Of a DNA stretch of 64,000 bases, positions 3,009-35,641 are shown piece by piece; the stretch's first letter is position 1; every line of letters starts with the position of its first letter. Below the pieces are notes generated by a model. It had not been told where the DNA came from and did not search any database. It saw nothing but the letters and a program-made list of their open reading frames with translations. The position numbers were made by a program, and so were the translations under genes. Where the stretch lies: the IMG/VR virus record IMGVR_UViG_3300042892_005961, positions 62,001 to 126,000 of that record, one strand, 5' to 3'.

Positions 3009-3025
3009 AACCTATTTAATAAAAT

Positions 3026-3103: not shown

Positions 3104-3125
3104 ATTTTAAGTATTTTTAATTATA

Positions 3126-5699: not shown

Positions 5700-5731
5700 A
5701 TAATATAATCAATTAAAGTGATTTTGAGAAA
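5700..5731 (-). promoter_or_regulatory. Candidate Bacteroidota-type sigma70 promoter TTTC-N20-TATATTAT
   Basis: Same spacing and boxes as at 14765, 35643, 63828 and 63845; the -7-like box ends 6 nt upstream of the cysC ATG. Confidence 0.45.
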
Positions 5732-6447
5732 TAATTCTCAATAAATTTTTCATTTAATGGATCATTTTTTATTCTTTCCATTATTTTATTCGCAATAAAT
5801 TTATTTCCTTCTTCATTTGCGTGTCCCTGTTCATCCCTATTGAACCTTTTTTCTTTAAAAAGATCAATTAAACCAGTAAATAATGTTCTAATATGTAAAC
5901 CAAAATCAACAAATCTACTTAAATCAATTTTTTTATATATCTCCAATTCCGTTATACTATAATCAAATTGCATATAATTGAAAAAATAATAAGGAATGTC
6001 ATGATTTATTAAAAATTGTTGTAAAGAATATATATAATGAATTGTATGCATACTGCCCATCGGTTCATACTTTAAATGGTATTCTGTGTTATCATATAAA
6101 GTTACATATACTGGTTTTTCATCCATTAAACAATGTTCTCGTCTATTTGGTCCCGACCATTGTATTATAACAAAATCAGGTTTTTTACCTGTACTCATTA
6201 ATTTACATATGGATTCCATTGATTGGTGAAATATCTTATCATTACCGACACCAGATATCGCATCATTAACTAAAAAGTCTTTATCTAATGCCTTTATTTC
6301 ACTTAAAGTCAAAGGTAAAATATATTGATTATGATAATAGTTAAATGATTTGGTAAATCCACTCATAAGTTGATTAGGCCAAACATAACTCTCTTTGAGT
6401 GTTGGGTGATCGTCACTATGTGAACAACCATTTGTATATATTAACAT
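5713..6447 (-). CDS. SGNH-hydrolase/acyltransferase-like protein
   Basis: TNGCSHS, NDAISGVGN, and C-terminal GHANEEG catalytic-His motif. Confidence 0.55.
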   Translation of the reverse strand: MLIYTNGCSHSDDHPTLKESYVWPNQLMSGFTKSFNYYHNQYILPLTLSEIKALDKDFLVNDAISGVGNDKIFHQSMESICKLMSTGKKPDFVIIQWSGPNRREHCLMDEKPVYVTLYDNTEYHLKYEPMGSMHTIHYIYSLQQFLINHDIPYYFFNYMQFDYSITELEIYKKIDLSRFVDFGLHIRTLFTGLIDLFKEKRFNRDEQGHANEEGNKFIANKIMERIKNDPLNEKFIENYFSKSL

Positions 6448-6450
6448 AGA

Positions 6451-6567
6451 TTAGTGGTTATAAATAAACGGATCTCTTTTACGTAATTCTTCTAATTTCT
6501 TTTTAAATTCCTTCTTTCTTTTCTTGTCAGCAAAGTATTTCTTCACCCAATTGATTAGTTTTTTCAT
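6451..6567 (-). CDS. Small basic peptide, 38 aa (MKKLINWVKKYFADKKRKKEFKKKLEELRKRDPFIYNH)
   Basis: Hand-translated, below the ORF track cutoff. Starts at a TAATG overlap with the upstream stop and fills the gap exactly. The LRKRDPFIY ending resembles a small conserved phage family (from memory). Confidence 0.65.
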   Translation of the reverse strand: MKKLINWVKKYFADKKRKKEFKKKLEELRKRDPFIYNH

Positions 6568-7259
6568 TATATTATATTTTTAAGTTTATCATTTAATAAG
6601 TATTCGTAAAACATTCTGTTCATTTTTTCACTCCAATGATCGTCGCCAAAAATACCACGTTCACCATTTGAATTAATATAATCATCTTGGAGGGTCTCCC
6701 AAAAATTTATATTTTTTTCCAAGATTTTCCTATCCTCAATGTTACTATTTTCATAGTTTAAATTGTCCCACGAAAAAACATACACATAAGATGGTGTGAT
6801 TTTAATTAAACTATCAATTATTTCAAGATAATTTGAATGTGAAGATTCAGTTGAATTAAAAATCTGACACATTTTTATTAATTCTTCATTTAAATAATCA
6901 AAACCATCTATGTTTTCATTACCTTTTGACTCCGCACCAATAAACTTATTTACAAATTTATAACCATTAACATCAAATTTGTACCAATTATCTTTTTTTA
7001 AAGGTAACCTTGTTCTGTGAAATGCCGGTAAACAAATTATTAAAATGTCATCTTGTTTTAAATTGGGGATTGATATTATCCATTTATCAATTATTGTTTG
7101 TACATCTCTACTTGGTTGTCCGTCCACAATAACGTTATAATTTAATACATTTTCTTCTATTAATCTCGTCCACGTATGTAATTTATTTATTGAAATTAAT
7201 TCATATAATTTGTCCGTTTTCATAACAAAACTATCTCCAATAATTAAAAATCTTTTCAT
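6567..7259 (-). CDS. SGNH-like protein
   Basis: IIGDSF at the N-terminus and GDDHWS near the C-terminus. Confidence 0.55.
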   Translation of the reverse strand: MKRFLIIGDSFVMKTDKLYELISINKLHTWTRLIEENVLNYNVIVDGQPSRDVQTIIDKWIISIPNLKQDDILIICLPAFHRTRLPLKKDNWYKFDVNGYKFVNKFIGAESKGNENIDGFDYLNEELIKMCQIFNSTESSHSNYLEIIDSLIKITPSYVYVFSWDNLNYENSNIEDRKILEKNINFWETLQDDYINSNGERGIFGDDHWSEKMNRMFYEYLLNDKLKNII

Positions 7260-7262
7260 ATT

Positions 7263-8930
7263 TTAATTTTTATACATAACATAATTACCCATTACTAATA
7301 TATCCATATCAGTATCAAAGAAAGTGTCGACGGCATCTTTAGGTGTCAACACCATTGTCTTATCTTTAACATTGAATGAGGTATTCAGTAAAATTGGATA
7401 ACCACTTAATTTTTCAAATTCATTTAGTAAATCATGAATTACAGTGTGTTTATAAACTGTTTGAACTCTCGCACTACCGTCTACATGAGTAACAGCCGGT
7501 AATTTATCTCGATATTCTTCCTTTACTTTAACAACTTGATTCATATAAGGAACATCATCCGTCATCTCGAAGAATTGATCTTGTTTCTCTTTGGTTACCA
7601 TTGGGGCAAATGGTCTAAAACCTTCTCTTTTCTTAATTACCTTATTAATTCTATCTTTCATATTTGGTAATGTTGGATTTGCTAATATTGATCTATTACC
7701 CAACGCTCTTGATCCGAATTCTATATGACCATTAAACCATCCAACAACCTTACCTTCAAATAATTTTTGTGCAATGTGTGTTCTTAATTTATTTTCAGAT
7801 TCAAACTTTTTAAAGTTCTTGGTGCCAATTGCTCGTCTAATATCATCTAAATAATATTCAGGACCTAAAAATGGATTTCTTGTAATTTTACTTCTTACTT
7901 TACGTTCTTTAACTAAGTAATGAACCACAGCACCTATTGCCGACCCTGCGTCAGATGGTGCGGGTGGAATCCAAAGATGATTGAAGTGTGACTTATCAAT
8001 AATTTTACCGTTAGCAGTTCCGTTATAAGCACAACCACCACTTAATGTTAAGTTTGGGCTTTTACTTACGTGTCTAATTGATTTGATAATCTCAAACAAT
8101 ACCTCTTCATATCTTAATTGAACCGCAGCTGCCAAATCTTTATGTGTTTGTTCTAATGTTTCTTCAGGTAATCTTTGTGGAACACTTAATAGTTCCGCAA
8201 GTTTCTCATTAAACATAGACTTATCGGTCTTATTCCAACAAAATACATCCATATTACACACTAACTTACCACTTTTAAATGAAATCAAATCACGTACCTC
8301 TTTAATATACTTTTGAGGGTCACCGTAAGATGCTAATCCCATTACCTTATATTCACCTTCATTTGGTCTAAACCCTAAATAAGAGGTTAATGCGGAGTAA
8401 TAAAGACCCATTGAATGTGGATACTTTGCAAGTGAACTATATTTGATTCCATTGTAATCGGCAACTCCTAATGACACCGTATCAATCTCACCCACACCGT
8501 CAACTGATAAACAAGTTGATTCCTCAAAATGTGATGTATAATGTGCATAATACTGATGAGCTTCATGATGTGTTGAATAAAACACCGTGGAACAAATCTC
8601 TTTTAATTTCTTATCAATTTCTTTTACGTTATTACGTATTTTAAAATAGGACTTTAACGAATATATTGGATTCTTAAACCATTGAGGTTTAATGTTTTCC
8701 ATTACTCGTTGGTATTTTAATTGTGGATCTTCATAATAACAAACCGCCTGTAAGTTCTTAGGTGTAATCTTATATTGTTTATAGATATATTCCAACGCTT
8801 TGGTTGGGAACGAATCATCATGTTTAATACCTGTGAATTTTTCTTCTTCACAAGCGAATATCAATTGGTTATCTCTGAATAAACAAACAGATGAATCGTG
8901 ATAAAATGCGGATATACCTATTATATACAT
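7263..8930 (-). CDS. Carbamoyltransferase (NodU/CmcH/TobZ family)
   Basis: GISAFYHDSS, HHEAH, DGVGE, EGEYKVMGLASYG, LSGGCAYN, PAPSDAGSAIGA, EFGSRALGNRSILA, RPFAP, HVDGSARVQTV, LLNTSFN. Confidence 0.95.
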   Translation of the reverse strand: MYIIGISAFYHDSSVCLFRDNQLIFACEEEKFTGIKHDDSFPTKALEYIYKQYKITPKNLQAVCYYEDPQLKYQRVMENIKPQWFKNPIYSLKSYFKIRNNVKEIDKKLKEICSTVFYSTHHEAHQYYAHYTSHFEESTCLSVDGVGEIDTVSLGVADYNGIKYSSLAKYPHSMGLYYSALTSYLGFRPNEGEYKVMGLASYGDPQKYIKEVRDLISFKSGKLVCNMDVFCWNKTDKSMFNEKLAELLSVPQRLPEETLEQTHKDLAAAVQLRYEEVLFEIIKSIRHVSKSPNLTLSGGCAYNGTANGKIIDKSHFNHLWIPPAPSDAGSAIGAVVHYLVKERKVRSKITRNPFLGPEYYLDDIRRAIGTKNFKKFESENKLRTHIAQKLFEGKVVGWFNGHIEFGSRALGNRSILANPTLPNMKDRINKVIKKREGFRPFAPMVTKEKQDQFFEMTDDVPYMNQVVKVKEEYRDKLPAVTHVDGSARVQTVYKHTVIHDLLNEFEKLSGYPILLNTSFNVKDKTMVLTPKDAVDTFFDTDMDILVMGNYVMYKN

Positions 8931-8933
8931 TAC

Positions 8934-9683
8934 TTACTTTTTATACAAAACCCTTTTTAATTGTTCGGGTCCTATGTGTCTTATTGGGTTATGAACTCCT
9001 AAAGGGTTTGGTGAAAATACATCCTCCATACTAAACTTCATTGCGGTTTCAATATCAGCAACTCCGTTCCCCTCCATATACTTCATAAAATAAATATCCT
9101 CTAAAATATCTTCAGTAATTGGATTATTTTCACAAATTTCAATCATTTTACTAACTGTTCTTAATGATAATCCCCCGTTTCCAACCCATTGATTTTCTTT
9201 GGGTTTTCTCCACGGTGCACCTACATAATCATATTCTAAAAAATCATCTATTCCGCTCCTTAATAATAAGGAATCTGTTTGGAAGATTAAAGCCTTAGTC
9301 CCTTTTACTTGTCTCCAAAACTCAACACTTTCCATATATCTACTATGTTCAGTATGATTAAAGTTATCAATTCCAATATTTGTTAAAACCACATTACCTA
9401 AACTTAACTTAATGTTTTCGACCAATTCTTTATTTTGATTACCGTGAAATATTTGTAACCCCCATTTGATAGGTGAATTTGTTTCATTTAAATAAAACAT
9501 TGTTGATTTAATAACGGTTAACAGATCGGGATGAACTCTGGGTTCTATAATGACCGCATAATAATCTGTTTCCGTTGAGATATGTGGGATATATCCAACG
9601 TGTTTCACATATTCTTCGGTTAGGAACTGTTCCCAAATCTTTTTAGATTCTTCGTTTGATTTCGTCATATATGTGTTTTGCAA
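8934..9683 (-). CDS. DUF5672-like putative glycosyltransferase
   Basis: IIEPRVHP, LIFQTDS, YDYVGAPW, VGNGGLSLR, EDIYF. The real start may be the second Met. Confidence 0.65.
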   Translation of the reverse strand: MQNTYMTKSNEESKKIWEQFLTEEYVKHVGYIPHISTETDYYAVIIEPRVHPDLLTVIKSTMFYLNETNSPIKWGLQIFHGNQNKELVENIKLSLGNVVLTNIGIDNFNHTEHSRYMESVEFWRQVKGTKALIFQTDSLLLRSGIDDFLEYDYVGAPWRKPKENQWVGNGGLSLRTVSKMIEICENNPITEDILEDIYFMKYMEGNGVADIETAMKFSMEDVFSPNPLGVHNPIRHIGPEQLKRVLYKK

Positions 9684-10266
9684 TTATTTTATACCCGTTT
9701 AGATTTGGATGGTAATCTCCTTCATAGAAGTTCTTTTCATCGTTCCATACACTCCTACTACCATATTCCCACACACCGATATTATTTTTAATTTCGTATT
9801 TTCTTAATACATCAGATACGCACCCATCTGGATTTATAAAATATTCAGGTAATTTTTTTGTATCAACATCCTCTTCTCTAAATGACGGATAGAAAGAATT
9901 AAAATAAAAATGTTTATACCCTTCTAATAGTTCTTCCATTAATAGATATATCTCAACCACGTTGTGAATATCTTTTGATTTATAACGATATGGATACGAT
10001 AGCATTATAATTACTATATCGTCTTTGTTTATAAATCCATTCTCAACCGTTTCTTTAAGATCTTTTAAAATATATTCATTACCATAACCACAAACACCTA
10101 AATTGACATATTCACACTTCAATTTATCAGATACCCATCTTGGCCAAGAGTTCATGTCTCTCAGTTTTTGGATAAACATATGTGGAAATGGTTCTTCTTT
10201 ATATTTTACATCTGTTTCAATTCCATGTCCTGCAGTCCAACTATCACCAAACGTAATTAATCTCAT
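9643..10266 (-). CDS. SGNH-like protein
   Basis: TFGDSWTAG, NLGVCGYGN, DYHPNLNGY. Confidence 0.65.
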   Translation of the reverse strand: MRLITFGDSWTAGHGIETDVKYKEEPFPHMFIQKLRDMNSWPRWVSDKLKCEYVNLGVCGYGNEYILKDLKETVENGFINKDDIVIIMLSYPYRYKSKDIHNVVEIYLLMEELLEGYKHFYFNSFYPSFREEDVDTKKLPEYFINPDGCVSDVLRKYEIKNNIGVWEYGSRSVWNDEKNFYEGDYHPNLNGYKIIAKHIYDEIKRRI

Positions 10267-11006
10267 TATATATTTTTTATGATATGGTTATAGAAATAGT
10301 CCGCTTGATTTTTGTGTCCGAACTCTCCCATATGGTCATCAATTACAACACCATTAGTTTCTTCAACAATTCTTGCCTTAAGAACTCCATCAAAGAACAT
10401 TGGTAAGTTTAAATAACCCAACAAGTTTGTTTTGCTACTTTCATTATCTCTTACAACAATACATTTTTTATCATCCTCTTGAATATTATGTTGATTGAAT
10501 ATTGTCTCGTCGGCCGTCCAATAAAAATTATGTGCACCGATGTTATTTAAATATACATTTATAAATCTCATCCATTGGTTTACTTCTAACGCCCATAAAG
10601 GATGAGATCTATTATACATTATTTCTTCTATTGTTCTTTTTGAAAATCCAGTTCCACCAAAATTATTTTCCGAAACTAATATTTGTGTAAAAATATTTTC
10701 ATCTAAATTTACAGATATAAATCTTGTAAGGTTTGTCCATCCAAACACCACAATATCATCTTGTTTTATTAACTCACATACATTAATGAACTGATTGAAA
10801 ATGTTGTAATTAGATGAACCCCCAACGGCACAATTCATTACCTTACAGTTTAATCTTTCCCCAAGTATGGTCGGCCAAACTGGTGGTAAATTACCTCCTC
10901 TCCATTTTTTATATTTATCAAAATCATTTTCAAATGGAAAAAATATTCCATCAATTGGGTCGTACTCCGCAGTAAAACTACATCCAAATGTCCAAAGTGT
11001 TCTCAT
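10266..11006 (-). CDS. SGNH-like protein
   Basis: TFGCSFTA, NCAVGGSSN, DDHMGEFG. Confidence 0.6.
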   Translation of the reverse strand: MRTLWTFGCSFTAEYDPIDGIFFPFENDFDKYKKWRGGNLPPVWPTILGERLNCKVMNCAVGGSSNYNIFNQFINVCELIKQDDIVVFGWTNLTRFISVNLDENIFTQILVSENNFGGTGFSKRTIEEIMYNRSHPLWALEVNQWMRFINVYLNNIGAHNFYWTADETIFNQHNIQEDDKKCIVVRDNESSKTNLLGYLNLPMFFDGVLKARIVEETNGVVIDDHMGEFGHKNQADYFYNHIIKNI

Positions 11007-12319
11007 TATATTAAACTTTCAAAAAATTGATAATCTTTTTCAACAATATTCAACATGTTCCATACTTTTTGTTTATTGTCTTCAAATCTTTGTTTATTGT
11101 TCTTATAGAACTCTTTAACTTGGTCTTGTATTCCGTCTAATCTTTTTATTTCTTCAACAAACATTTCTAATCTTCTCATTTGATTTGGTTCGTTGTCATA
11201 TGAATGATTAATAATATCATCAAAAAAATCAAAATTATATTTCTCTTTCATTGTTTTAATATGATATTGTGTTGCGAGTATCATTGGTAATTGATAATAA
11301 AAAAATGGTCTGTAAGATTTCTCACTAATATGTGTTACGAATAGGTCATCAAAAAATTTAGATTCGGTGACAATATTAATATATGAGTTTTCGTAGTTCA
11401 TTCCAAATTCGGGTATTCTCATCCACGAAGGAAAACCTTCTATGTTTGGTTCTTTAAATAAATTAAACCAATCTTTATTTTTTTCCATATCACTTCTCTT
11501 GAACTTAATATCGTTGAAAAAAATTATTTCATCTTTGAAATATTCTTTTTGTTCTCTTGTAAAAATTTTATCATAATAATGTCCTATTGGAAAACAATCG
11601 TATGGTGGTACCAAAGACCAATTAATTTTTTCTAATAGTCCTTCTTTTTTCAAAAAACATAACAAAGCGTATCTGTGATGTTTTGGTGTTTTATTAAAAC
11701 ACATAAACATTTTACCTTCCTTGTCATCAACCCAATTACATCCTCCTGCATTTGTCAATGAAAAATTAGACGAATGTGCAATGAAATGTAACGTATGTAC
11801 ATTTATTCCACTATTGTGTTTAATTTTAAGGTCATTCAACCTTTCATTATTATTAATTACGTAAAATTGTTTTGGGTCTAAATTTCTATGTTCAAGATAT
11901 TCTAATAATCTAATAAAACCGCTTTCATAATCCGGTTCGTGTTCTGTTATTATAATTACTTTTAAATTTTTACATTTTTGTAAACATTCAATAACCTCTT
12001 CACTTAATGGTGATTTTTCAAACTTCTCTGTGGCCTTTTCTTCATTCTCAACAAATAAATTTATTATATCGATATTACCGTGTGCAATTGGGTAATAAAA
12101 ATTTAAATCAGGTCTAAAATAAACTTCACTTAAATTGTGTGATTTAATTTCAAATTTATTTTGCTCCTTTGTTTCTATTTGAAAATGTAATAATAGATGT
12201 TGGAAATTAAATGTGAACCTATCTCCTCCATTGTATTTGAAGGTATTGGTTTCACTATCCCATCTATCATAACAAAGATTTAATATCTTGTTTTTTTCCT
12301 CCATAATAAATTGTGTCAT
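11006..12319 (-). CDS. GT-B glycosyltransferase, GT10 (fucosyltransferase)-like
   Basis: FMCFNKTPKHHR and YINIVTES...HISEKSYRPF...LP (GT10-type xEN/ES...TEK motif), DHSYD. Probable start at the second Met (MEEKNK). Confidence 0.55.
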   Translation of the reverse strand: MTQFIMEEKNKILNLCYDRWDSETNTFKYNGGDRFTFNFQHLLLHFQIETKEQNKFEIKSHNLSEVYFRPDLNFYYPIAHGNIDIINLFVENEEKATEKFEKSPLSEEVIECLQKCKNLKVIIITEHEPDYESGFIRLLEYLEHRNLDPKQFYVINNNERLNDLKIKHNSGINVHTLHFIAHSSNFSLTNAGGCNWVDDKEGKMFMCFNKTPKHHRYALLCFLKKEGLLEKINWSLVPPYDCFPIGHYYDKIFTREQKEYFKDEIIFFNDIKFKRSDMEKNKDWFNLFKEPNIEGFPSWMRIPEFGMNYENSYINIVTESKFFDDLFVTHISEKSYRPFFYYQLPMILATQYHIKTMKEKYNFDFFDDIINHSYDNEPNQMRRLEMFVEEIKRLDGIQDQVKEFYKNNKQRFEDNKQKVWNMLNIVEKDYQFFESLI

Positions 12320-13442: not shown

Positions 13443-13448
13443 ATTATA

Positions 13449-14723: not shown

Positions 14724-14764
14724 AAATTATTATGAAATATAAATAAAAAAAACCATAATAACAA

Positions 14765-14795
14765 TTTGTAATTCATTATTTTTTTTGTATATTTT
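14765..14795 (+). promoter_or_regulatory. Candidate Bacteroidota-type promoter TTTG-N19-TATATTTT for the + strand cassette
   Basis: Lies in the divergent gap 14724-14799; matches the TTTG(-33)/TAnnTTTG(-7) consensus with one mismatch and ends 4 nt before ATG 14800. Confidence 0.5.
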
Positions 14796-14799
14796 ATAT

Positions 14800-15771: not shown

Positions 15772-15772
15772 T

Positions 15773-20165: not shown

Positions 20166-20171
20166 TATATT

Positions 20172-22792: not shown

Positions 22793-22800
22793 TAAATAAA

Positions 22801-24179: not shown

Positions 24180-24204
24180 AAAAAGGGACTTAATGTCCCT
24201 TTTT
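24178..24204. terminator. Bidirectional intrinsic terminator
   Basis: AAAAAAA-GGGAC-TTAAT-GTCCC-TTTTT between convergent genes. Confidence 0.8.
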
Positions 24205-24206
24205 AT

Positions 24207-25936: not shown

Positions 25937-25938
25937 TA

Positions 25939-27393: not shown

Positions 27394-27439
27394 ATTGGTG
27401 TTTTTTTTATAATATAAACTTTATTATTGACATATGAAA

Positions 27440-30983: not shown

Positions 30984-32412
30984 TTATAAACATTGTATTT
31001 GGGTATATCGTCTCATCAACACTTATGATATCCAATACGTCTAATATTTTATTTAATCCGTCTTCTTTATAATCTATCTTTTTTTGTTGCATTTCAGTAA
31101 CAAATCTTTTCTCATTTCTTGCGGTCGTTTCTCCTTTTGCCCATTTATCAATTCCATCAACTTTAATAAATCCTTCATCCTCATGAAACATACACTTAAA
31201 GTTACCTTCTCTTCTTATTGGAATAATATTATCTACAACTTCGATATTTTCTTTAGTAATTTCAGTATTAAGATTTTCACATATTATGTTATTTACCTTA
31301 TCTAAATAACCATTCTCAAAATCCATATGTAAAACCAAACTTTTTTCTTTACTAACCGACGTTTTTATATTTTTATAACACTTGTCATATATTTTAACTT
31401 CAGCAATTTGACCTTTAAAATATGTTTTTTGGTTGCTACAAAACCCTAATATAAATGGATTGGTGTTATCGTGTTTTTTAAGGTTTTCTCCGACCATGAA
31501 TGGTTTATTCTCTTTAACATCGTTTACGTTAGTAACTAATTCATTGTTAACAAAGAAATACATTTCTTTTGTTTTATTATCAAATGAAACTGTCACCCAC
31601 GTCCATTCATTTTCAAATTTCTTAACCCAATTATTATGATAATTTTCGTTTTTATCAAAAACTGTCATGTTAACCGTCCTTGAATTATTAAAGGATAACC
31701 CCCATGTCCAAGATTCGTGTTTTCTTAATATTGGGTATTCAATAAATTTCTTTTCTTTGTCACCAACCAACCAAATAGGCACTTTCTCTTGTTGTTGTTC
31801 TGCTTTAAATAATACAGAAATAGTATGATTACCAGATAAACATTTACTTATCTTTTCGTTTGTTGGTATAACCACTAATGAATCATCTCCATTAAAATTT
31901 ACAACCGATTTTTCTTTATGTGATTTAAAAATCTTACCATCTTTATAACCCTCAAAATAACACCTCCAAAAAAGATCATCATCTTCTTGACCCCAATCCC
32001 AATATTCGTTTGAATAACCATTGGTTTGATACGCTTGTTCTTTGGTAAATAAAACAACACCTCCAAAGTATTGATCATACCCTAATGTGTAATTATACTT
32101 TGATAATTTGGTTGCAATATGAACTGGTGATTTTTCAGGATAGGAGTAATCACAAATTAAATTATCTTTATCGATTGCTAACATATCCACGTCGTGCCAA
32201 GCTACATAATCACAACCATCTTCAAAAGCATAATGTGCTGCAATGTTTTTTGTTGCCCCTCTATTAAATAATTTATCATCAACTTGATGTCCAACATAAA
32301 ATTTATGTTCTATTCCTTTTTCGTTTAAATATTTTGATAAATGTGGTATCAAATTCTCAATGTGTTCCTTTCTATTTCTGTACGGTATACAAATACCTAA
32401 TTTATGACTCAT
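30967..32412 (-). CDS. GT7 (beta-1,4-galactosyltransferase-like) glycosyltransferase with an inserted LamG domain
   Basis: IPYRNR, FNRG, HDVD, YFGGV, NGYSNEYWDWGQEDDDL; then a LamG segment (FKGQIAEVKIYD); the GT7 tail resumes at RREGNFKCMFH. Confidence 0.8.
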   Translation of the reverse strand: MSHKLGICIPYRNRKEHIENLIPHLSKYLNEKGIEHKFYVGHQVDDKLFNRGATKNIAAHYAFEDGCDYVAWHDVDMLAIDKDNLICDYSYPEKSPVHIATKLSKYNYTLGYDQYFGGVVLFTKEQAYQTNGYSNEYWDWGQEDDDLFWRCYFEGYKDGKIFKSHKEKSVVNFNGDDSLVVIPTNEKISKCLSGNHTISVLFKAEQQQEKVPIWLVGDKEKKFIEYPILRKHESWTWGLSFNNSRTVNMTVFDKNENYHNNWVKKFENEWTWVTVSFDNKTKEMYFFVNNELVTNVNDVKENKPFMVGENLKKHDNTNPFILGFCSNQKTYFKGQIAEVKIYDKCYKNIKTSVSKEKSLVLHMDFENGYLDKVNNIICENLNTEITKENIEVVDNIIPIRREGNFKCMFHEDEGFIKVDGIDKWAKGETTARNEKRFVTEMQQKKIDYKEDGLNKILDVLDIISVDETIYPNTMFINVKTK

Positions 32413-33824
32413 ATTCCAACTGTTACAAATGTTATGTTATTTTCGTTTGTTATTCCGTGTTCTACAAAATTTAAATCTGATAATCCATCGTTATATAATA
32501 ATTCGTGATTTGTAGATACTTCATTTATAAATCGTAGTTGATTCCATCTAGTAGATTGATCTTTCCATTTGTTATCTAAAAATCCATTTTCTTCGTGAGG
32601 TAAACTTTCAAATAGAGATTTTCTCCTATGTGGAACATATAATTCGTATATACTATCTACTATTAAGTCTGTAATTTCACAATTAATGATTTCACCATCA
32701 TTATTATTTCCTGATAAATCTTTTAATTTATAACCTTTTATTATCTTAGTGTCATAATATAATTTAAGGGAATCCGCAGATTTGTAATCACCAAAATTTT
32801 GTGTTAAACCCTTAAATTTATTTTTTGATATTTCCATTATTTCATTATCATCTAAAACGATATCATAAACGGCAAAAGCATCAAAATATCCTTTAAAATA
32901 TTTTGGTTCATATTCATTGTTAAGGTCACCTGTTCCAATATAAAAAAATGGTTGTTTTTGGTATTGATGTAGTTTTCCTGAAAATTCTACTTTACCAATA
33001 ATATCCCCGTCTTGGTATACTTTAATAATCTTATCTACGTCATTAATTGTAATGGAAATATTTGTCTTATAATTTTTCTTTATTTTAGAATTGACATAAA
33101 GTACATTATGTTTATTATCAAAAGTACAAATATTATATCTGGAAAATGAGTTGAATGATATTGAAAAATCATATCCTGGTATTGTAAATATATTAAATTG
33201 ATCCACTTCTTTTGTATGGTCACATATTATATCATCAGGATAAAAGGAAATAAATAATGTAATATCCTTATTAAAGTTAAGATTATTTATACCTTTTACG
33301 TAAGCATCTTTTCCATTAAATTTTAATACAGAACCTGATGTTCCCATATTGTCTAAATAAAGTGTATTTAAATCTAAATTATTTTTTATACATCTCAATA
33401 ATAAATCGGTGTCTTCATAACCCCACCCCCAATACTTGTTAGAATACCCGTTTATTTTTTTAAAATCTTTAACATTAAACATTGTAACTCCTCCAAAATA
33501 GGTATCGAATAATTCCCTATCTTGGTTTGAAAAATTGGTGGCTAAGTGTGTGGGTGTAATAGAATAACTATAATCTACATCAATCGGTAACATGTCTATA
33601 TCATGAAAAACAACATACTTACATTTAAGTTTCTCAGCATAAGTAAATCCTATATTTAATAACATTCCTCTATTGAATAATTTAGCATCATCTTGTTCAA
33701 CTATAATAATTTCATAAGGAATATTCTTTTCATTAAGATATTTTGTAATTCTTTCTTTAAAAATGTCAAGTTGATCGTATCTATTTCTAAATGGAACAAC
33801 CACTCCGATTTTTTTATTTCGCAT
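32409..33824 (-). CDS. GT7-like glycosyltransferase with an inserted LamG domain (paralog)
   Basis: VPFRNR, FNRGMLLN, HDID, YFGGV, NGYSNKYWGWGYEDTDL; LamG segment (FKGYFDAFAVYD); the GT7 tail resumes at RRKSLFESLPH. Confidence 0.8.
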   Translation of the reverse strand: MRNKKIGVVVPFRNRYDQLDIFKERITKYLNEKNIPYEIIIVEQDDAKLFNRGMLLNIGFTYAEKLKCKYVVFHDIDMLPIDVDYSYSITPTHLATNFSNQDRELFDTYFGGVTMFNVKDFKKINGYSNKYWGWGYEDTDLLLRCIKNNLDLNTLYLDNMGTSGSVLKFNGKDAYVKGINNLNFNKDITLFISFYPDDIICDHTKEVDQFNIFTIPGYDFSISFNSFSRYNICTFDNKHNVLYVNSKIKKNYKTNISITINDVDKIIKVYQDGDIIGKVEFSGKLHQYQKQPFFYIGTGDLNNEYEPKYFKGYFDAFAVYDIVLDDNEIMEISKNKFKGLTQNFGDYKSADSLKLYYDTKIIKGYKLKDLSGNNNDGEIINCEITDLIVDSIYELYVPHRRKSLFESLPHEENGFLDNKWKDQSTRWNQLRFINEVSTNHELLYNDGLSDLNFVEHGITNENNITFVTVGI

Positions 33825-34062
33825 TTTTCTTTACTTTCTTATCGTCAGTTTTAATTTCTTCTTCTTCTTTGAATGGAATTTCTTTCACTATTTTATTATG
33901 AAATTCAGCCAAATAATATTGGACTCTATTTCCCCATTCATCTTTATCTATTTCCTCAAACCACACAGTTAATGCGTCTAATGAATTAGCGATTTTTTCT
34001 AATGCCTTGATTTTACGTGTTTCAAGTTCAAGTTCAATTTTATCTTTTTCTTCCTTTGTCAT
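33814..34062 (-). CDS. Hypothetical acidic/basic helical protein
   Basis: 82-aa ORF coupled to both neighbours; no recognisable motif. Confidence 0.6.
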   Translation of the reverse strand: MTKEEKDKIELELETRKIKALEKIANSLDALTVWFEEIDKDEWGNRVQYYLAEFHNKIVKEIPFKEEEEIKTDDKKVKKNAK

Positions 34063-34916
34063 ATTGATATGATTTTTTTAATTAATTTATTCCAATTTTT
34101 ATAACGGTTATATTCGGGTTTATCTAATCCTAATTCAAACATAAAATCAGGATTTAATAAATCTATTTTAAAATTTGTCTTCTTTAATTCTTTATACATT
34201 TGAAAATATTCACTTGAAAATGCGTACTCTTCATTTAGGTTTGCAACATTCATTACTCTATCTATCGATGTTGAATCCCATTTAAAGTGATGAACTTGTA
34301 CCGAGTGTGTATCCACCGGTGCAATTAATGGATGACTCCATCCTTGCCATCTCCATGTTGTGTGGTCATCGATTTTAGCGTAATGTTGTCCTGCCGTCAC
34401 ATCAACATATCCTTTCATAATACAAATCTTATTTGGACACGCATTACTCATTGGATATCTAAAAAAACCAGCATTAGGAAATTGTTCCCATATAGATATG
34501 TCATTAACTAACTCACTAAACTCACCTCCACTACCTATTCTATCAATAAAACCACCTCTTACAATATCCCAATTATTTTCTTGACAATCATATATTATTT
34601 TACGTAAATCATCATTAGGATATAAATGGAATTCATCAATATCGGCAATAACATACCAATTATCTTTTTGTTTTGCTTTAGCAAAATTATAAAGTTGTGT
34701 TACTTTTTCCCAATCAAATACTCTTTCTTGAACGGTTATAACAACATTAACTTTTTCGTAGTTTTTAATTACTTGATTAATTTCTTCGGTTAAATTTGGA
34801 TATAACTCCGTTTCATAAACGGCAATCAAAATTTCATCAACATGTTTTTGATAATGTTCAATGAAATGTGGAAGTAAGTTAATTCCGTGACCTATGACTG
34901 TTAATAATTTAATCAT
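34059..34916 (-). CDS. GT-A fold glycosyltransferase (GT2-like)
   Basis: LLPHFIEHY, WYVIADIDEF (DxD), HHFKW. Confidence 0.65.
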   Translation of the reverse strand: MIKLLTVIGHGINLLPHFIEHYQKHVDEILIAVYETELYPNLTEEINQVIKNYEKVNVVITVQERVFDWEKVTQLYNFAKAKQKDNWYVIADIDEFHLYPNDDLRKIIYDCQENNWDIVRGGFIDRIGSGGEFSELVNDISIWEQFPNAGFFRYPMSNACPNKICIMKGYVDVTAGQHYAKIDDHTTWRWQGWSHPLIAPVDTHSVQVHHFKWDSTSIDRVMNVANLNEEYAFSSEYFQMYKELKKTNFKIDLLNPDFMFELGLDKPEYNRYKNWNKLIKKIISI

Positions 34917-35641
34917 TTCTTATTAATTACCGTTATACCACTTGAAGATGGTTTGTTAGGTAATATACGAAAATTATATAAATTAATCAAATTATATGAT
35001 GGGTTTTTTTCTAATTCCTTAACTAATTTTGATGGTCCATCAAATCTATGATGGTCTTTTTTTGAATCTTCAGATATTAATAGATTTTCCTCGTAATTCG
35101 GATCGGTATCGTGTATAACGATAATTCCTTTATCAGATAAAATATTTGAATATAAATCAAAATCCAATTTAACTCCCTCATAGGAATGGTCACCATCAAT
35201 AAATAAAACATCTATCTTTATATCTTGTAAAACAAAGAAATTATAATAAGCATCTTCTGATGTTGATTTAATTAATCGTGGTTGGAATTGTTTGTGATAG
35301 TATGAGTTTTCATCCTCTAAATCATTTGGACCTCCAATACCGTTACATGCGTCAACGATATATGTTACACCAATGTCTCCCCAATTAATATCAGGGTTAC
35401 CTTCAAATATTCCTTGTTTGTGTAAATCAATTCTTGCTTGTGTCATAATACGGGGTATAAACCCACCTCCCGACCCGATACAGACACAGGTTTTTGCTCT
35501 CATATGTTGTATCAGTGAATAAACAATAAGACCGTCACCCATATGTTCTGTCGTTGCACCATGTGTCCATCTATAAGGGACTGAATCACCCCCATTTGTT
35601 GTGATATTTCCTGTTATGAAATCTTGATTGGTTATCATCAA
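34913..35641 (-). CDS. Class I SAM-dependent methyltransferase (Methyltransf_24-like)
   Basis: VCIGSGGG, DVLFIDGDHSYEGVKLDF, GIIVIHD. Confidence 0.8.
   Translation of the reverse strand: MMITNQDFITGNITTNGGDSVPYRWTHGATTEHMGDGLIVYSLIQHMRAKTCVCIGSGGGFIPRIMTQARIDLHKQGIFEGNPDINWGDIGVTYIVDACNGIGGPNDLEDENSYYHKQFQPRLIKSTSEDAYYNFFVLQDIKIDVLFIDGDHSYEGVKLDFDLYSNILSDKGIIVIHDTDPNYEENLLISEDSKKDHHRFDGPSKLVKELEKNPSYNLINLYNFRILPNKPSSSGITVINKK

What the first reader, a model, noticed from the sequence alone, without database searches (positions are those of the whole stretch)
5713..35641. About 30 kb autonomous glycan synthesis and decoration cluster in a phage
Seen: activated-sugar enzymes (Ugd, three SDRs, RmlC, TPP pair), about nine candidate glycosyltransferases of four types, and tailoring enzymes for carbamoylation, methylation, acylation/deacylation (six SGNH), radical SAM chemistry and (nearby) sulfation. 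No flippase, Wzy polymerase or undecaprenyl-phosphate transferase is visible. Established: giant eukaryotic viruses glycosylate their own virions, but phage examples on this scale are poorly characterised. Inference: cytoplasmic, lipid-carrier-independent glycosylation of virion proteins, rather than host O-antigen conversion or DNA modification.
Basis: partly seen in the sequence, partly recalled or inferred. Interest (0 to 1): 0.7.

Follow-up and report, generated by a model that had tools for sequence, protein, structure and literature searches.

The report
Lake jumbo phage's own glycan factory
An uncultured freshwater jumbo phage devotes at least 30 kb to soluble sugar-building enzymes beside its tail-fibre genes, probably to coat its own proteins with an elaborate glycan, though what the glycan is attached to has not been shown.

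Summary
In window 5713-35641, 27 of 29 genes are assignable to glycan chemistry:
- a nucleotide-sugar dehydrogenase, three SDRs, RmlC and a split TPP E1 pair;
- a NodU-type carbamoyltransferase and a methyltransferase;
- two twitch radical-SAM enzymes and six divergent SGNH-like proteins;
- nine glycosyltransferase candidates: five GT-B paralogues of a Pfam-less family, two animal-type GT7 enzymes, one GT2-like, one DUF5672.

The contig is a 63% fragment of a lake-water myovirus of about 335 kb, not a cellular locus. Six genomes of the lineage lack a flippase, a polymerase or any polytopic glycan-export protein; three searched by family also lack priming transferases and an integrase. So synthesis is cytoplasmic and not phage-exported.

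"Autonomous" is overstated, because there is no sugar-1-phosphate nucleotidyltransferase. Sulfation rests on one kinase only.

New findings:
- A core of about 10 kb (methyltransferase, GT2-like, two GT7-lectin fusions, lectin-radical-SAM) is kept in 41-46 of 46 related viral contigs. It is flanked by a variable sugar island.
- A second glycan block lies outside the window.
- All six genomes examined carry very long Ser/Thr-rich repeats in large, probably fibrous proteins.

Virion-protein glycosylation is the best reading (about 0.45) but is unproven. Host-envelope remodelling remains a live rival.

The parts
2044..2733 (-). 229-aa unknown protein, first gene of a three-gene cassette that is duplicated in the genome
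   Evidence: Paralogue at genome 26138-26860; no family hit.
2745..3008 (-). 87-aa Cys-rich protein (CxxC...CxxCxC...C), partner of the ATP-grasp-Hint gene
   Evidence: Sequence. Paralogue upstream. Kept next to the core in G002 and in the distant L136.
3126..4634 (-). 502-aa protein: ATP-grasp-like N-terminal half, Hint/BIL (intein-like) C-terminal half, Cys-rich disordered tail
   Evidence: AF2 model, pLDDT 76.6. Foldseek hits BIL2 6y75 (E 2e-8, TMt 0.74), inteins, Hedgehog Hint and the ATP-grasp YgiC. 653 unnamed homologue clusters. Syntenic with the core in distant relatives.
4661..4876 (-). 71-aa protein with hydrophobic segments, travels with the two genes that follow
4873..5259 (-). 128-aa HxGH nucleotidyltransferase-like protein (weak match)
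   Evidence: GRWQNWHKGH motif. CTP_transf_like E 0.018, below cut-off. 85% identical copy beside the APS-kinase-like gene in L025.
5256..5693 (-). APS-kinase-like P-loop kinase
   Evidence: PF01583, 65 bits. Below the NCBIfam equivalog cut-offs.
5713..6447 (-). DUF6071 protein, SGNH-like
   Evidence: PF19547, 28.8 bits. Hit by the HMM of the SGNH-like paralogues at 5e-8. Motifs.
6567..7259 (-). SGNH-like protein (GDS...DDH)
   Evidence: Paralogy; HMM 5e-66; motifs.
7263..8930 (-). O-carbamoyltransferase (NodU/CmcH family)
   Evidence: PF02543 and PF16861, E 1e-60 and 4e-66. NodU model 173 bits, below equivalog cut-off. Recurs beside the core in distant relatives.
8934..9683 (-). DUF5672 protein, candidate glycosyltransferase (not tested)
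   Evidence: PF18922, 102.7 bits; no PHROG.
9643..10266 (-). GDSL/SGNH-like hydrolase
   Evidence: PF13472 28.3 bits and PF00657 21.8 bits, both just below cut-off. FGDS and DYH motifs.
10266..11006 (-). SGNH-like paralogue. The family has 10 copies in this record and 14 in G001.
11006..12319 (-). GT-B glycosyltransferase of a Pfam-less, phage-dominated family (paralogue 1 of 5)
12267..13442 (-). Nucleotide-sugar 6-dehydrogenase (Ugd-like, divergent)
   Evidence: PF03721 and PF00984. TIGR03026 144 bits, below cut-off. 64-69% identical copies beside the core in distant relatives.
13449..14723 (-). GT-B glycosyltransferase (paralogue 2 of 5, the one modelled)
   Evidence: AF2 pLDDT 77, pTM 0.82. 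All top Foldseek hits are GT-B enzymes: VldE, SdgB, GtfA, SPY, a chlorovirus GT. Atlas neighbours are Uroviricota clusters; the nearest named family is GT10.
14785..15771 (+). Extended SDR (GalE/RmlB/UXS-like)
   Evidence: PF01370, 118 bits.
15773..16588 (+). DUF6071-like / SGNH-like protein
   Evidence: Weak PF19547. Paralogue at genome 29633-30394. Motifs.
16585..17130 (+). NDP-4-keto-6-deoxyhexose 3,5-epimerase (RmlC-like)
   Evidence: PF00908, 110.6 bits. TIGR01221 105 bits, below cut-off.
17127..17762 (+). TPP-binding E1-alpha-like half enzyme
   Evidence: PF00676 and PF02775.
17723..18934 (+). GT-B glycosyltransferase (paralogue 3 of 5)
18927..20165 (+). GT-B glycosyltransferase (paralogue 4 of 5)
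   Evidence: No match in 50,697 GenBank phage records.
20172..21815 (+). Fusion of an Fcl-like SDR with a 2OG-Fe(II) oxygenase
   Evidence: PF01370 at residues 4-237 and PF13640 at 441-529.
21812..22792 (+). Extended SDR (closest to GDP-fucose synthase)
22801..23634 (+). 277-aa protein, SGNH-like by motif only (GCS...DHH)
   Evidence: Three tandem copies in L016 and L017.
23577..24179 (+). E1-beta-like (transketolase Pyr-domain) half enzyme
   Evidence: PF02779. About 87% identical in 10 related loci.
24180..24204 (.). Bidirectional hairpin terminator where the + block meets the - strand genes
   Evidence: 10-bp stem with T tracts on both strands.
24207..24638 (-). Conserved 143-aa protein of unknown function
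   Evidence: About 91% identical in 13 loci; no family.
24638..25936 (-). GT-B glycosyltransferase (paralogue 5 of 5)
25939..27393 (-). Twitch-domain radical-SAM enzyme (conserved core)
   Evidence: NF033640, 297 bits against cut-off 170. Present in 42 of 46 loci, with 1-5 paralogues per locus.
27440..28177 (-). 245-aa protein related to the lectin-like N-terminal part of the next gene
   Evidence: BLAST to residues 273-446 of w28161.
28161..30983 (-). 940-aa fusion: LamG/ConA-like N-terminal half plus twitch radical-SAM C-terminal half (conserved core)
   Evidence: NF033640, 307 bits, at residues 484-930. The N-terminal half matches Laminin_G_3 clusters at 0.94-0.96. 42 of 46 loci.
30967..32412 (-). 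GT7 (beta4GalT-like) catalytic domain fused to a LamG lectin-like domain (conserved core)
   Evidence: PF13733, PF02709, PF13385. Beta4GalT7 3lw6, E 6e-31. 46 of 46 loci. 1,679 unnamed clusters.
32409..33824 (-). Second GT7-LamG fusion (conserved core)
   Evidence: The alignment keeps the VPFRNR, FNRG, HDIDMLP and WGWGYED motifs. 46 of 46 loci.
33814..34062 (-). Conserved 82-aa acidic/basic helical protein
   Evidence: 42 of 46 loci, about 80% identity; sequence.
34059..34916 (-). GT2-like protein (weak match), conserved core
   Evidence: PF13704, E 1.4e-3, below cut-off. 43 of 46 loci. No PHROG.
34913..35641 (-). Methyltransf_24 SAM-dependent methyltransferase (conserved core)
   Evidence: PF13578, 46 bits. 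41 of 46 loci, about 78% identity.
35663..36787 (-). LamG protein (with a weak F5/8-type-C match), probably virion-associated
   Evidence: PF13385, 65 bits. Matches the C-terminus of PHROG 8510, 'virion structural protein'.
37386..38111 (-). LamG-domain protein
41203..41814 (-). Tail-fibre C-terminal domain protein
   Evidence: PHROG tail-fibre families, E down to 1e-26.
41818..45309 (-). Collagen-like tail fibre, 336 residues of proline-free G-(S/T)-(S/N) repeats
49288..52638 (-). Collagen-like tail fibre, 420 residues of G-(S/T)-(S/D) repeats
52729..58671 (-). 1,980-aa collagen-like fibre protein, 648 residues of G-(S/T)-(S/D) repeats
58688..60166 (-). Collagen-like tail fibre, 171 repeat residues

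Best explanation
SHOWN
- The window is part of an uncultured lake-water myovirus of about 335 kb.
- The phage encodes a large set of soluble enzymes. They take host NDP-sugars and tailor them: 6-oxidation to a uronic acid, 4-keto/epimerase/reductase steps, and probably a two-carbon branch from the split TPP enzyme.
- Nine glycosyltransferase candidates in the window, and at least fifteen in the record, would link the sugars. The product could then be decorated by O-carbamoylation, methylation, probable O-acyl editing (SGNH-like proteins) and radical-SAM chemistry.
- No lipid-carrier priming enzyme, flippase, polymerase or exporter is encoded anywhere in the lineage.
- A core of about 10 kb is kept throughout the lineage: methyltransferase, GT2-like, two GT7-LamG fusions, LamG-radical-SAM. 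The sugar-nucleotide island beside it varies between relatives.

INFERRED
- Both the GT7 transferases and a radical-SAM enzyme carry lectin-type LamG domains. The core lies directly downstream of the tail-fibre genes on the same strand, with no terminator found between them.
- I therefore think the enzymes act in the cytoplasm, late in infection, on a macromolecular acceptor made by the phage.
- The most likely acceptors are the very long Ser/Thr-rich tracts of its fibre and other virion proteins, giving a strain-variable glycan coat on the virion.
- On this view the GT7 pair would add beta-1,4-linked hexose or hexosamine units. The lectin domains would hold the enzymes on the growing glycoprotein, as in animal ppGalNAc-transferases. 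The radical-SAM enzymes would edit sugars that are already attached.
For: Phage identity and completeness:
- Searches give the phage hallmark genes. Searches show the record is a 63% fragment, colinear with G001 (335,630 bp, estimated 100% complete).

Enzyme inventory:
-.
- The GT-B fold of the five-paralogue family.
- GT7 catalytic motifs are intact and the best solved relative is beta4GalT7.

No membrane machinery:
- No protein with more than 4 predicted TM segments in G000, G001, G002 (not printed for G002) or G004.
- The only such protein in G003 and G006 is a DUF401 transporter.
- No Wzx, Bac_transf or WecA/MraY families.

Other absences:
- No integrase.
- No NTP_transferase.

Conserved core and variable island:
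-.

Lectin fusions:
-.

Context:
- The next genes downstream are LamG proteins that match a virion structural PHROG, followed by four collagen-like fibres. No - strand terminator was found between the fibres and w24207.

Ser/Thr-rich tracts in all six genomes examined:
- G-(S/T)-S collagen-like repeats in G000, G001 and G003.
- (T-P-T-x)n repeats in G002, G003 and G004. In G002 they lie in the 2,703-aa orthologue of a baseplate-module protein.
- Ser-rich heptad-like repeats in G006.

Precedents:
- Mycobacteriophage capsid and tail-tube O-glycans (Freeman 2023, as cited in PMC12619734).
- Giant-virus glycosylation that is partly independent of the host, and glycosylation of viral collagen-like proteins (PMC9614988).
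- Glycosylated collagen-like BclA (PMC8968730).
Against: - No data show sugar on any virion protein.
- Ser/Thr-rich and collagen-like fibres are common in phages that have no glycosyltransferase arrays, as the many PHROG hits show. Their presence is therefore not specific.
- The narrower idea that collagen repeats are the acceptor fails as a general rule. G002 keeps the core but has no G-X-Y run at all.
- Soluble glycosyltransferases could equally extend host undecaprenyl-linked intermediates.
- The conserved neighbours (a Cys-rich small ORF and the ATP-grasp-Hint protein) and the twitch radical-SAM paralogue arrays fit peptide or protein maturation as well as sugar chemistry.
- Several assignments are below family cut-offs: GT2-like, SGNH, the APS-kinase-like protein, and all SDR subtypes.
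- The sigma-70 promoter scan gave no more sites than shuffled sequence, and the terminator scan only slightly more (8 against 6.0 +/- 2.4), so co-transcription with the fibre genes is not demonstrated.
Confidence: 0.45

Rival explanations
1. Host-envelope remodelling. The soluble phage enzymes build on the host's own undecaprenyl-linked O-antigen, capsule or glycoprotein intermediates. The host's flippase or ABC exporter then puts the altered glycan on the infected cell. That could block superinfection or stop progeny sticking to debris. This is the usual, untested reading of the 'LPS' clusters in cyanophages.
For: - Cytoplasmic glycosyltransferases of O-antigen pathways are also soluble or peripheral, so missing phage membrane genes do not exclude this.
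- T4-like cyanophages carry 22-24 comparable genes, and their authors interpret them this way (PMC12801897).
- A conserved core next to a variable sugar island resembles the layout of cellular O-antigen and capsule loci.
- The host is probably a Bacteroidota member, a group rich in surface glycans. The evidence is a related contig binned with a Flavobacteriaceae MAG and a Bacteroidota-style signal peptide on a relative's protein.
Against: - There is no integrase, so a long-term benefit from serotype conversion is unlikely.
- At least 15 glycosyltransferases with no primer or exporter would need host exporters to accept a largely foreign glycan.
- Lectin-domain fusions on transferases and on a radical-SAM enzyme are unusual for lipid-linked assembly.
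- The core is embedded next to the tail-fibre genes.
Confidence: 0.25
2. A non-virion product. The module makes a soluble oligosaccharide or glyco-peptide, or it modifies a phage or host protein other than a virion component. On this view the radical-SAM enzymes, the ATP-grasp-Hint protein and the Cys-rich small ORF act on a peptide, as in RiPP-like maturation with glycosylation. Alternatively the enzymes build a free, orthosomycin-like oligosaccharide.
For: - The Cys-rich ORF and the ATP-grasp-Hint gene stay beside MTase, GT2-like, GT7 x2 and radical SAM even in relatives with only 40-59% identical GT7.
- Radical-SAM paralogues expand to 4-5 per locus.
- The Hint domain keeps its terminal ...EHN and four invariant Cys in a disordered tail.
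- From my own knowledge: a split E1-alpha/beta pair, 2OG oxygenases, many methyltransferases and glycosyltransferases, and a radical-SAM epimerase also occur together in avilamycin-type oligosaccharide clusters.
Against: - No scaffold-forming enzyme (PKS or NRPS) and no recognisable precursor peptide was found.
- The Hint domain lacks the usual N-terminal Cys/Ser nucleophile.
- LamG domains and the structural-gene context point to a macromolecular phage target.
Confidence: 0.15
3. DNA hypermodification. The sugars are attached to bases of the phage genome, as in T4 glucosyl-hmC or in the oligosaccharide-bearing thymidines of SP-15, YerA41 and Carin-5.
For: - Phages with oligosaccharide-modified thymidine do carry a gene block for nucleotide-sugar modification plus glycosyltransferases (PMC12686479).
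- Phage glycosyltransferases that modify DNA are diverse (Pyle 2024, as cited).
Against: - No ThyA-family hydroxymethylase in G000 or in the complete G001.
- The cluster adjoins the tail fibres, and the DNA polymerase is more than 100 kb away. In YerA41 and Carin-5 the block neighbours the polymerase.
- The genome assembles at even depth of about 47x from ordinary shotgun runs, and 19 lake runs hold it. Hypermodified genomes of that kind resist standard sequencing.
- Lectin-fused GT7 enzymes have no precedent on DNA.
Confidence: 0.05

Closest known systems
Giant-virus glycosylation machinery (chlorovirus PBCV-1 capsid glycans; mimivirus fibril glycans and glycosylation of collagen-like proteins by L230)
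   Same: - Virus-encoded nucleotide-sugar tailoring enzymes, several soluble glycosyltransferases and methyltransferases, acting without ER/Golgi or lipid-carrier export (PMC9614988).
- Partial reliance on host NDP-sugars.
- Collagen-like virion proteins are present.
   Different: - The host here is a bacterium and the virus is a tailed phage.
- The enzyme families differ: GT7-LamG fusions, a Pfam-less GT-B family, twitch radical SAM, a carbamoyltransferase.
- No glycan has been observed on these virions.
Mycobacteriophage virion O-glycosylation (Freeman et al. 2023)
   Same: Phage-encoded cytoplasmic glycosyltransferases decorate capsid and tail-tube proteins, shielding them from recognition (as summarised in PMC12619734).
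   Different: - From my own knowledge, those phages carry only a few glycosyltransferase genes and use host sugars unmodified.
- Here there are about 30 genes in the window, and more than 40 in the record, including sugar-nucleotide chemistry.
- The likely acceptors are long internal repeats, not C-terminal tails.
'LPS / cell-wall synthesis and modification' clusters of T4-like cyanophages (P-SSM2, S-SCSM1, S-SCSM2R)
   Same: - 22-24 genes with up to 13 glycosyltransferases, NDP-sugar epimerases and RmlC, in aquatic myoviruses.
- The function has not been tested (PMC12801897).
   Different: - An unrelated phage lineage. The family-B polymerase is only 24% identical to any GenBank phage, and there is no match of the GT7-LamG or a GT-B paralogue in 50,697 GenBank phage records.
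- The lineage-wide GT7-lectin / radical-SAM-lectin core is not among the genes listed for those cyanophages in the passages I read.
- At least 15 glycosyltransferase candidates in a 63% fragment exceeds the 13 reported there as possibly the marine record.
Animal beta-1,4-galactosyltransferases (CAZy GT7), especially beta4GalT7 of the proteoglycan linker; and ppGalNAc-transferases as an architectural analogue
   Same: - The catalytic N-terminal 150 residues align at E 6e-31 and keep the nucleotide-binding, DxD and WGWGxED motifs.
- Like ppGalNAc-transferases, the catalytic domain is fused to a lectin-type domain.
   Different: - The C-terminal third of the GT7 catalytic domain is replaced by a LamG domain.
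- Donor and acceptor are unknown.
- The protein is soluble and cytoplasmic, not a Golgi type-II membrane protein.
Serine-rich-repeat and SD-repeat protein glycosylation in Gram-positive bacteria (GtfA/B, SdgA/B); BclA collagen-like glycoprotein
   Same: - Soluble GT-B enzymes glycosylate long Ser-rich repeats in the cytoplasm.
- SdgB and GtfA are among the top structural matches of the phage GT-B model.
- BclA is a glycosylated collagen-like filament (PMC8968730).
   Different: - The fold match is generic GT-B (TM 0.3-0.4).
- There is no sequence-level kinship and no accessory secretion system.
Moraphages, freshwater jumbo phages with four core glycosyltransferase orthogroups (PMC12619734)
   Same: Freshwater phages of 200-307 kb with a PolB, predicted Bacteroidota hosts and several core glycosyltransferases of unknown role.
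   Different: I could not test whether this lineage is the same one, because no moraphage sequences were available to me. That paper does not mention radical SAM, carbamoyltransferase or methyltransferase genes.

Membership tests
Wzx/Wzy- or ABC-transporter-dependent O-antigen/capsule locus | Priming phosphoglycosyl transferase on undecaprenyl phosphate (WbaP/Bac_transf or WecA/MraY family) | tested here: not met
   PF02397 is absent from G001 and G002. PF00953 is absent from G000, G001 and G002. The same searches find these families in 10 and 12 of 14 control genomes.
Wzx/Wzy- or ABC-transporter-dependent O-antigen/capsule locus | Polytopic flippase, polymerase or permease (10 or more TM segments) | tested here: not met
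   PF01943 is absent. A hydropathy scan finds no protein with more than 4 TM segments in G000, G001, G002 (not printed for G002) or G004. The single 8-TM protein of G003 and G006 is a DUF401 transporter.
Wzx/Wzy- or ABC-transporter-dependent O-antigen/capsule locus | Nucleotide-sugar synthesis genes plus several glycosyltransferases in one locus | tested here: met
Serotype-converting phage gtrABC / temperate O-antigen modification | Membrane GtrA/GtrB/Gtr(type) proteins and a temperate lifestyle (integrase) | tested here: not met
   No such membrane proteins. No PF00589 integrase in G000, G001 or G002. Serine recombinases were not searched.
Phage DNA glycosylation (T4-type, or SP-15/YerA41/Carin-5-type) | Hydroxymethyl-pyrimidine synthesis (ThyA-family hydroxymethylase) | tested here: not met
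   PF00303 is absent from G000 and from the complete G001. One copy is present in G002.
Phage DNA glycosylation (T4-type, or SP-15/YerA41/Carin-5-type) | Glycan genes beside the replisome; DNA that resists standard sequencing | tested here: not met
   The cluster adjoins the tail fibres and the polymerase is more than 100 kb away. Depth is an even 47x or so in shotgun contigs, and 19 runs hold the sequence. The comparison is with PMC12686479. Depth in contigs is only indirect evidence.
Virus-encoded virion-protein glycosylation (mycobacteriophage / giant-virus kind) | Virus-encoded soluble glycosyltransferases with no lipid-carrier route | tested here: met
Virus-encoded virion-protein glycosylation (mycobacteriophage / giant-virus kind) | Plausible acceptor tracts in structural proteins, and linkage to structural genes | tested here: inconclusive
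   Ser/Thr-rich repeats occur in large proteins of 6 of 6 genomes, and the core lies next to the fibre genes. Such repeats are not specific to glycosylated phages, and only some of these proteins are shown to be structural.
Virus-encoded virion-protein glycosylation (mycobacteriophage / giant-virus kind) | Glycan demonstrably attached to virion proteins | not testable with these tools
   This needs virions or viral-fraction glycoproteomics.
CAZy GT7 (beta4GalT family) | GT-A catalytic domain with the FNR(A/G)xLxNxG, DxD and WGWGxED(D) motifs | tested here: met
   PF13733 and PF02709 are above cut-off in both proteins. PDB beta4GalT7 and beta4GalT1 match at E 1e-25 to 6e-31, and the motifs are visible in the alignment. 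The C-terminal metal-binding loop region is not aligned.
Twitch-domain radical-SAM subfamily NF033640 | Full-length match above the curated cut-off | tested here: met
   296.6 and 307 bits against a cut-off of 170. The substrate of this subfamily is unknown to me.
SGNH/GDSL hydrolases | Block I GDS(L), and block V with the catalytic Asp/His, above the family threshold | tested here: inconclusive
   Only w9643 approaches the Pfam cut-offs (28.3 against 32.9 bits). The others share G-[D/C/S]-S and D-x-H (not D-x-x-H) motifs and paralogy. A PDB profile search found nothing. No structure was modelled.
PAPS-dependent sulfation pathway | ATP sulfurylase, APS kinase and a sulfotransferase | tested here: not met
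   There is only an APS-kinase-like protein, below equivalog cut-offs, plus a weak HxGH nucleotidyltransferase. PF13469 and PF00685 are absent. Other sulfotransferase families were not searched.

The most novel reading that the evidence does not exclude
An abundant, wholly uncultured lineage of freshwater jumbo phages carries a eukaryote-like, lipid-carrier-independent O-glycosylation system. Lectin-tethered GT7 transferases and lectin-tethered radical-SAM sugar editors would build a strain-variable, mucin- or proteoglycan-like coat on hundreds of Ser/Thr sites in the phage's own fibres. An ATP-grasp-Hint protein may take part in attaching or processing the product. That would amount to a phage 'glycocalyx' on the scale seen so far only in giant viruses.
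Probability: 0.3. Interest if true: 0.85.

Novelty: new variant of a known kind. Interest (0 to 1): 0.62.

Why it matters
Glycans on phage particles have been demonstrated only for a few mycobacteriophages, which carry a handful of transferases. Large "LPS-like" clusters in cyanophages have stayed uninterpreted for twenty years.

This lineage offers a sharper test case:
- It has a conserved, recognisable core: GT7-lectin x2, lectin-radical-SAM, methyltransferase, GT2-like.
- Complete genomes of the lineage encode no export machinery.
- Obvious candidate acceptors are present.
- The core GT7-LamG protein is widespread in environmental data: 1,679 clusters of that protein, and 19 lake runs spanning 2020-2024.

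If the virion reading is right, phage particles in lakes carry variable glycan coats. Those coats could affect adsorption, aggregation, grazing and recognition by host defences.

The work also defines three things that current family databases miss:
- a GT-B family with about 12,000 representatives;
- a lectin-radical-SAM fusion;
- an ATP-grasp-Hint protein.

Tried and rejected
1. **Collagen-specific glycosylation as the universal role of the core.** Rejected. G002 keeps the core but has no G-X-Y run. I replaced it with the weaker observation that every genome has Ser/Thr-rich repeats of some kind.
2. **Cellular capsule locus, or a true provirus.** Rejected. IMG/VR labels the record 'provirus', but it is colinear end to end with a relative estimated 100% complete, and its sequence runs across that relative's contig ends. 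It has no integrase.
3. **The 8-TM protein found in G003 and G006 as a hidden flippase or priming transferase.** Rejected. Its homologues carry DUF401/CitMHS transporter domains.
4. **Sequence searches of solved structures.** The GT-B family, the radical-SAM enzyme, the SGNH-like family and the ATP-grasp-Hint protein gave nothing useful. Only fold comparison worked.
5. **Cultured or deposited relatives.** Megablast of the structural region found only collagen-repeat similarity to 735-kb uncultured phages. tblastn of the GT7-LamG protein and of a GT-B paralogue found no GenBank phage.
6. **Equivalog-level naming of the SDRs, Ugd, RmlC, NodU and APS kinase.** Every one is below the curated cut-offs, so the actual sugars cannot be named.
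7. **Sigma-70 promoter scan.** No more sites than in shuffled sequence.
8. **Metatranscriptome.** It holds only short contigs of relatives on the GT7 genes, and DNA carry-over cannot be excluded.
9. **Complex prediction.** Not run. Enzyme-substrate contacts with low-complexity repeats would not give an interpretable verdict.
10. **Papers linking twitch radical SAM, glycosyltransferases and phages.** None found.

Full report
**What the window is.** The window is bases 62001-126000 of a single 211,168-bp, 31% G+C virus record. IMG/VR labels the record 'provirus', and CheckV puts it at 63% complete.

It is a tailed phage. It carries a tail sheath, a baseplate wedge, a family-B DNA polymerase, a ribonucleotide reductase, DnaB and SbcC. 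Tail-fibre genes lie inside the window. The polymerase is only 24% identical to the nearest GenBank phages.

The record is colinear, at 80-93% nucleotide identity, with a 335,630-bp viral contig (G001) that CheckV rates 100% complete. Its sequence runs straight across that contig's two ends. So the record is a fragment of a genome of about 335 kb. The 'provirus' label is probably an artefact of the cell-like sugar genes. No tyrosine integrase is present in this record or in two relatives.

The sequence occurs in 19 lake-water shotgun runs dated 2020-2024. A related 248-kb contig was binned with a Flavobacteriaceae MAG. Relatives encode a protein with a Bacteroidota-style signal peptide. Both are weak hints that the host belongs to the Bacteroidota.

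**The observation.**
- a nucleotide-sugar 6-dehydrogenase;
- three extended SDRs, one fused to a 2OG-Fe(II) oxygenase;
- an RmlC-type epimerase;
- a split TPP enzyme made of E1-alpha-like and E1-beta-like halves;
- a NodU/CmcH-type O-carbamoyltransferase;
- a Methyltransf_24 methyltransferase;
- two radical-SAM proteins, both of the twitch-domain subfamily NF033640.

All of these sit below NCBIfam equivalog cut-offs, so the actual sugars cannot be named.

**The glycosyltransferases.** Five paralogous proteins of about 420 residues have no Pfam, NCBIfam, PHROG or PDB sequence match. A profile built from them finds 12,192 representatives in a library of 1.8 billion proteins. An AlphaFold model (pLDDT 77, pTM 0.82) matches only GT-B glycosyltransferases. 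The nearest language-model clusters are phage ones, with GT10 as the closest named family.

**Claims that hold only in part.** The 'six SGNH' claim rests on weak evidence. One protein has a sub-threshold GDSL hit. The rest are tied to it by paralogy, by an HMM I built from the paralogues, and by shared terminal motifs. The family has 10 copies in this record and 14 in G001.

'Sulfation' rests on one APS-kinase-like protein. No sulfotransferase of the two main families is present.

**The cluster is bigger than reported.** Outside the window, at genome 40534-50905, lies a second block. It holds two GT4 and four GT2 transferases, two more SDRs, two methyltransferases, a polysaccharide deacetylase and a PhyH oxygenase. 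That makes at least 15 glycosyltransferase candidates in a 63% fragment. A recent cyanophage paper describes 13 as possibly the highest count in a marine phage (PMC12801897).

**No membrane machinery, checked in complete genomes.** A hydropathy scan finds no protein with more than four predicted transmembrane segments in this record, in G001, in G002 (93% complete) or in G004. G003 (97% complete) and G006 have one 8-TM protein each, and its homologues carry DUF401/CitMHS transporter domains.

Profile searches find no Wzx, Bac_transf or WecA/MraY family member, although the same searches hit most control genomes. The pathway is therefore cytoplasmic and not exported by the phage.

It is not autonomous, however. 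No sugar-1-phosphate nucleotidyltransferase is encoded in the three genomes searched. The phage must draw on host NDP-sugars.

**Anatomy across the lineage.** The GT7 protein has relatives of 53-97% identity on 46 IMG/VR contigs of up to 335 kb. It falls into 1,679 unnamed protein clusters on contigs of up to 351 kb. It has no match in 50,697 GenBank phage records.

Within 10 kb of it, 41-46 of the 46 loci keep the same run of genes:
- methyltransferase;
- GT2-like protein;
- an 82-residue protein;
- GT7-LamG;
- a second GT7-LamG;
- a twitch radical-SAM gene.

Genes beyond that run vary. Radical-SAM paralogues number one to five. GT-B copies range from zero to seven. The dehydrogenase and the carbamoyltransferase recur beside the core in distant relatives.

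So the 30 kb is a conserved core of about 10 kb plus a variable sugar island. Between this record and G001 the whole island is one 28.4-kb block at 92.9% identity, higher than the 80-89% typical of the flanking blocks.

**The core enzymes.** Both GT7 domains align to animal beta4GalT7 and beta4GalT1 (E down to 6e-31). They keep the nucleotide-binding, DxD and WGWGxED motifs, so they are probably active inverting transferases. After about 160 residues the GT7 domain gives way to a LamG (concanavalin-like) domain.

The 940-residue radical-SAM protein also has a LamG-like N-terminal half. A free-standing copy of that region lies next to it.

Lectin-type domains fused to both a transferase and a radical-SAM enzyme suggest that both work on an assembled macromolecule, not on a free nucleotide sugar. 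That is my inference.

**What is the acceptor?** Reading along the - strand, the order is tail fibres, then small proteins, then two LamG proteins that match a 'virion structural protein' PHROG, then the core. The gaps between genes are short. The only strong hairpin is the bidirectional one at w24180-24204, where the inverted + block begins.

The four fibre proteins contain 1,575 residues of proline-free G-(S/T)-(S/D/N) collagen-like repeats. I first considered collagen-specific glycosylation, by analogy with BclA and with mimivirus L230 (PMC8968730 and PMC9614988). G002 keeps the core yet has no G-X-Y run at all, so that narrow form fails.

G002 does carry about 1,000 residues of (T-P-T-x)n repeats in the 2,703-residue orthologue of a baseplate-module protein. 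G003, G004 and G006 carry collagen-like, T-P-T-type or Ser-rich heptad-like tracts in large proteins.

Every genome examined therefore offers hundreds of clustered Ser/Thr sites in large, probably fibrous proteins. This fits virion O-glycosylation. It is not specific evidence, because such repeats are common in phage fibres generally.

**Rivals.**
- *Host-envelope remodelling.* The phage enzymes could use the host's own carrier and exporters. This reading stays open, and it is the usual (untested) interpretation of cyanophage clusters. Against it: there is no integrase, the number of foreign transferases is large, the enzymes carry lectin fusions, and the core sits among structural genes.
- *DNA hypermodification.* This is unlikely. 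There is no ThyA-family hydroxymethylase in this record or in G001. The cluster is far from the polymerase. The genome assembles at even depth from ordinary shotgun data, whereas oligosaccharide-modified genomes such as Carin-5 resist sequencing and keep their sugar genes beside the polymerase (PMC12686479).
- *A non-virion product.* This rival arises from an unexpected neighbour. A 502-residue protein just upstream (w3126-4634) models as an ATP-grasp-like domain fused to a Hint/BIL intein-like domain. It has a conserved ...EHN end and a Cys-rich tail. It is paired with an 87-residue Cys-rich ORF. The pair stays beside the core even in a relative whose GT7 is only 40% identical. Twitch radical-SAM enzymes, Cys-rich peptides and an ATP-grasp domain are also the pattern of peptide maturation systems. 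Part of the 'glycan' core may therefore act on a protein or peptide. I could not resolve this.

**Verdict.**
- Phage origin, and cytoplasmic synthesis independent of a lipid-carrier route of the phage's own, are well supported.
- A DNA target is unlikely.
- The virion-protein target is the best available reading (about 0.45) but is unproven.
- 'Autonomous' and 'sulfation' are overstated.

In kind, this is a new variant of virus-encoded glycosylation. It is set apart by its scale, by a lineage-wide core of lectin-fused GT7 and radical-SAM enzymes, and by enzyme families that current databases do not describe.

Noticed in passing
window 2044-4634; second copy at genome 26138-28793 (L002:8138-10793): A duplicated three-gene cassette: a 229-240-aa unknown protein, an 87-89-aa Cys-rich protein, and a 502-508-aa ATP-grasp-like + Hint/BIL protein. 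The Hint domain keeps a terminal ...EHN and four invariant Cys in a disordered tail, but has no N-terminal Cys/Ser nucleophile. The cassette stays beside the glycan core in very distant relatives. Its function is unknown.
   Followed up: partly
genome 40534-50905 (L003:4534-14905), outside the window: A second glycan block on the + strand: two GT4, four GT2, two SDRs, Methyltransf_24 and another methyltransferase, a polysaccharide deacetylase and a PhyH dioxygenase.
   Followed up: partly
window 11006-12319, 13449-14723, 17723-20165, 24638-25936: The five GT-B paralogues belong to a family with 12,192 representatives at 50% clustering. The family has no Pfam, NCBIfam or PHROG model, and its nearest clusters are all from tailed phages. 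Copy number ranges from 0 to 7 among the relatives searched.
   Followed up: yes
window 7253-35686 against G001 278346-249941: The whole sugar island is a single 28.4-kb alignment block at 92.9% identity. Most of the rest of the two genomes aligns at 80-89%, and the fibre genes at 68-80%. This may reflect recent exchange of the island or stronger constraint on it.
   Followed up: no
L025, L038, L042 (about 11.4-19.7 kb in each locus): Tandem arrays of four or five twitch radical-SAM paralogues lie directly after the GT7 pair in some relatives. This window has two.
   Followed up: no
whole record G000: IMG/VR classes the record as 'provirus'. It is colinear with a complete relative across that relative's contig ends and has no integrase. 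The label is probably caused by the cell-like sugar genes.
   Followed up: yes
window 45619-48786 against genome 148212-149522 and 157676-159808: A segment of about 95 residues is 82-91% identical between a 1,055-aa protein in the fibre region and two proteins 40 kb away. This points to domain shuffling among tail-module proteins.
   Followed up: no
G001 104977-106557 (L061:4977-6557); orthologues in G003, G004, G006: A protein of about 500 aa with a Bacteroidota-style signal peptide, a long Ala/Ser/Pro then Glu/Lys low-complexity linker, and a C-terminal domain that looks by eye like an outer-membrane beta-barrel. It lies in the part of the genome missing from this record.
   Followed up: no
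G003 230328-231335 (L102:10328-11335); G006 247794-248801: An 8-TM DUF401/CitMHS-type transporter is encoded by some relatives. It has 1,093 homologue clusters and appears to be an auxiliary transporter, not glycan export machinery.
   Followed up: yes
window 834-2032: Two 2OG-Fe(II) oxygenases of the prolyl-hydroxylase-like families lie just upstream. Together with the oxygenase fused to the SDR at w20172 and a paralogue at genome 7127-7777, they form another expanded family.
   Followed up: no
window 4661-5693: A trio of genes travels together and is 67-86% identical in the distant L025: a small hydrophobic protein, an HxGH nucleotidyltransferase-like protein and an APS-kinase-like protein. 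It may activate something other than sulfate.
   Followed up: partly
G002 102906-103946 (L073, L074): The only ThyA-family gene found in the lineage sits in a 430-aa open frame. The profile matches it in two pieces separated by about 45 residues, which suggests an insertion.
   Followed up: no
L136 (93-kb contig binned in an 'Anaeromicropila' MAG): The same module order (MTase, GT2-like, GT7 x2, radical SAM, Cys-rich ORF, ATP-grasp-Hint) occurs at 31-57% identity on a contig assigned to a Firmicutes MAG. The module therefore reaches beyond the freshwater lineage.
   Followed up: partly
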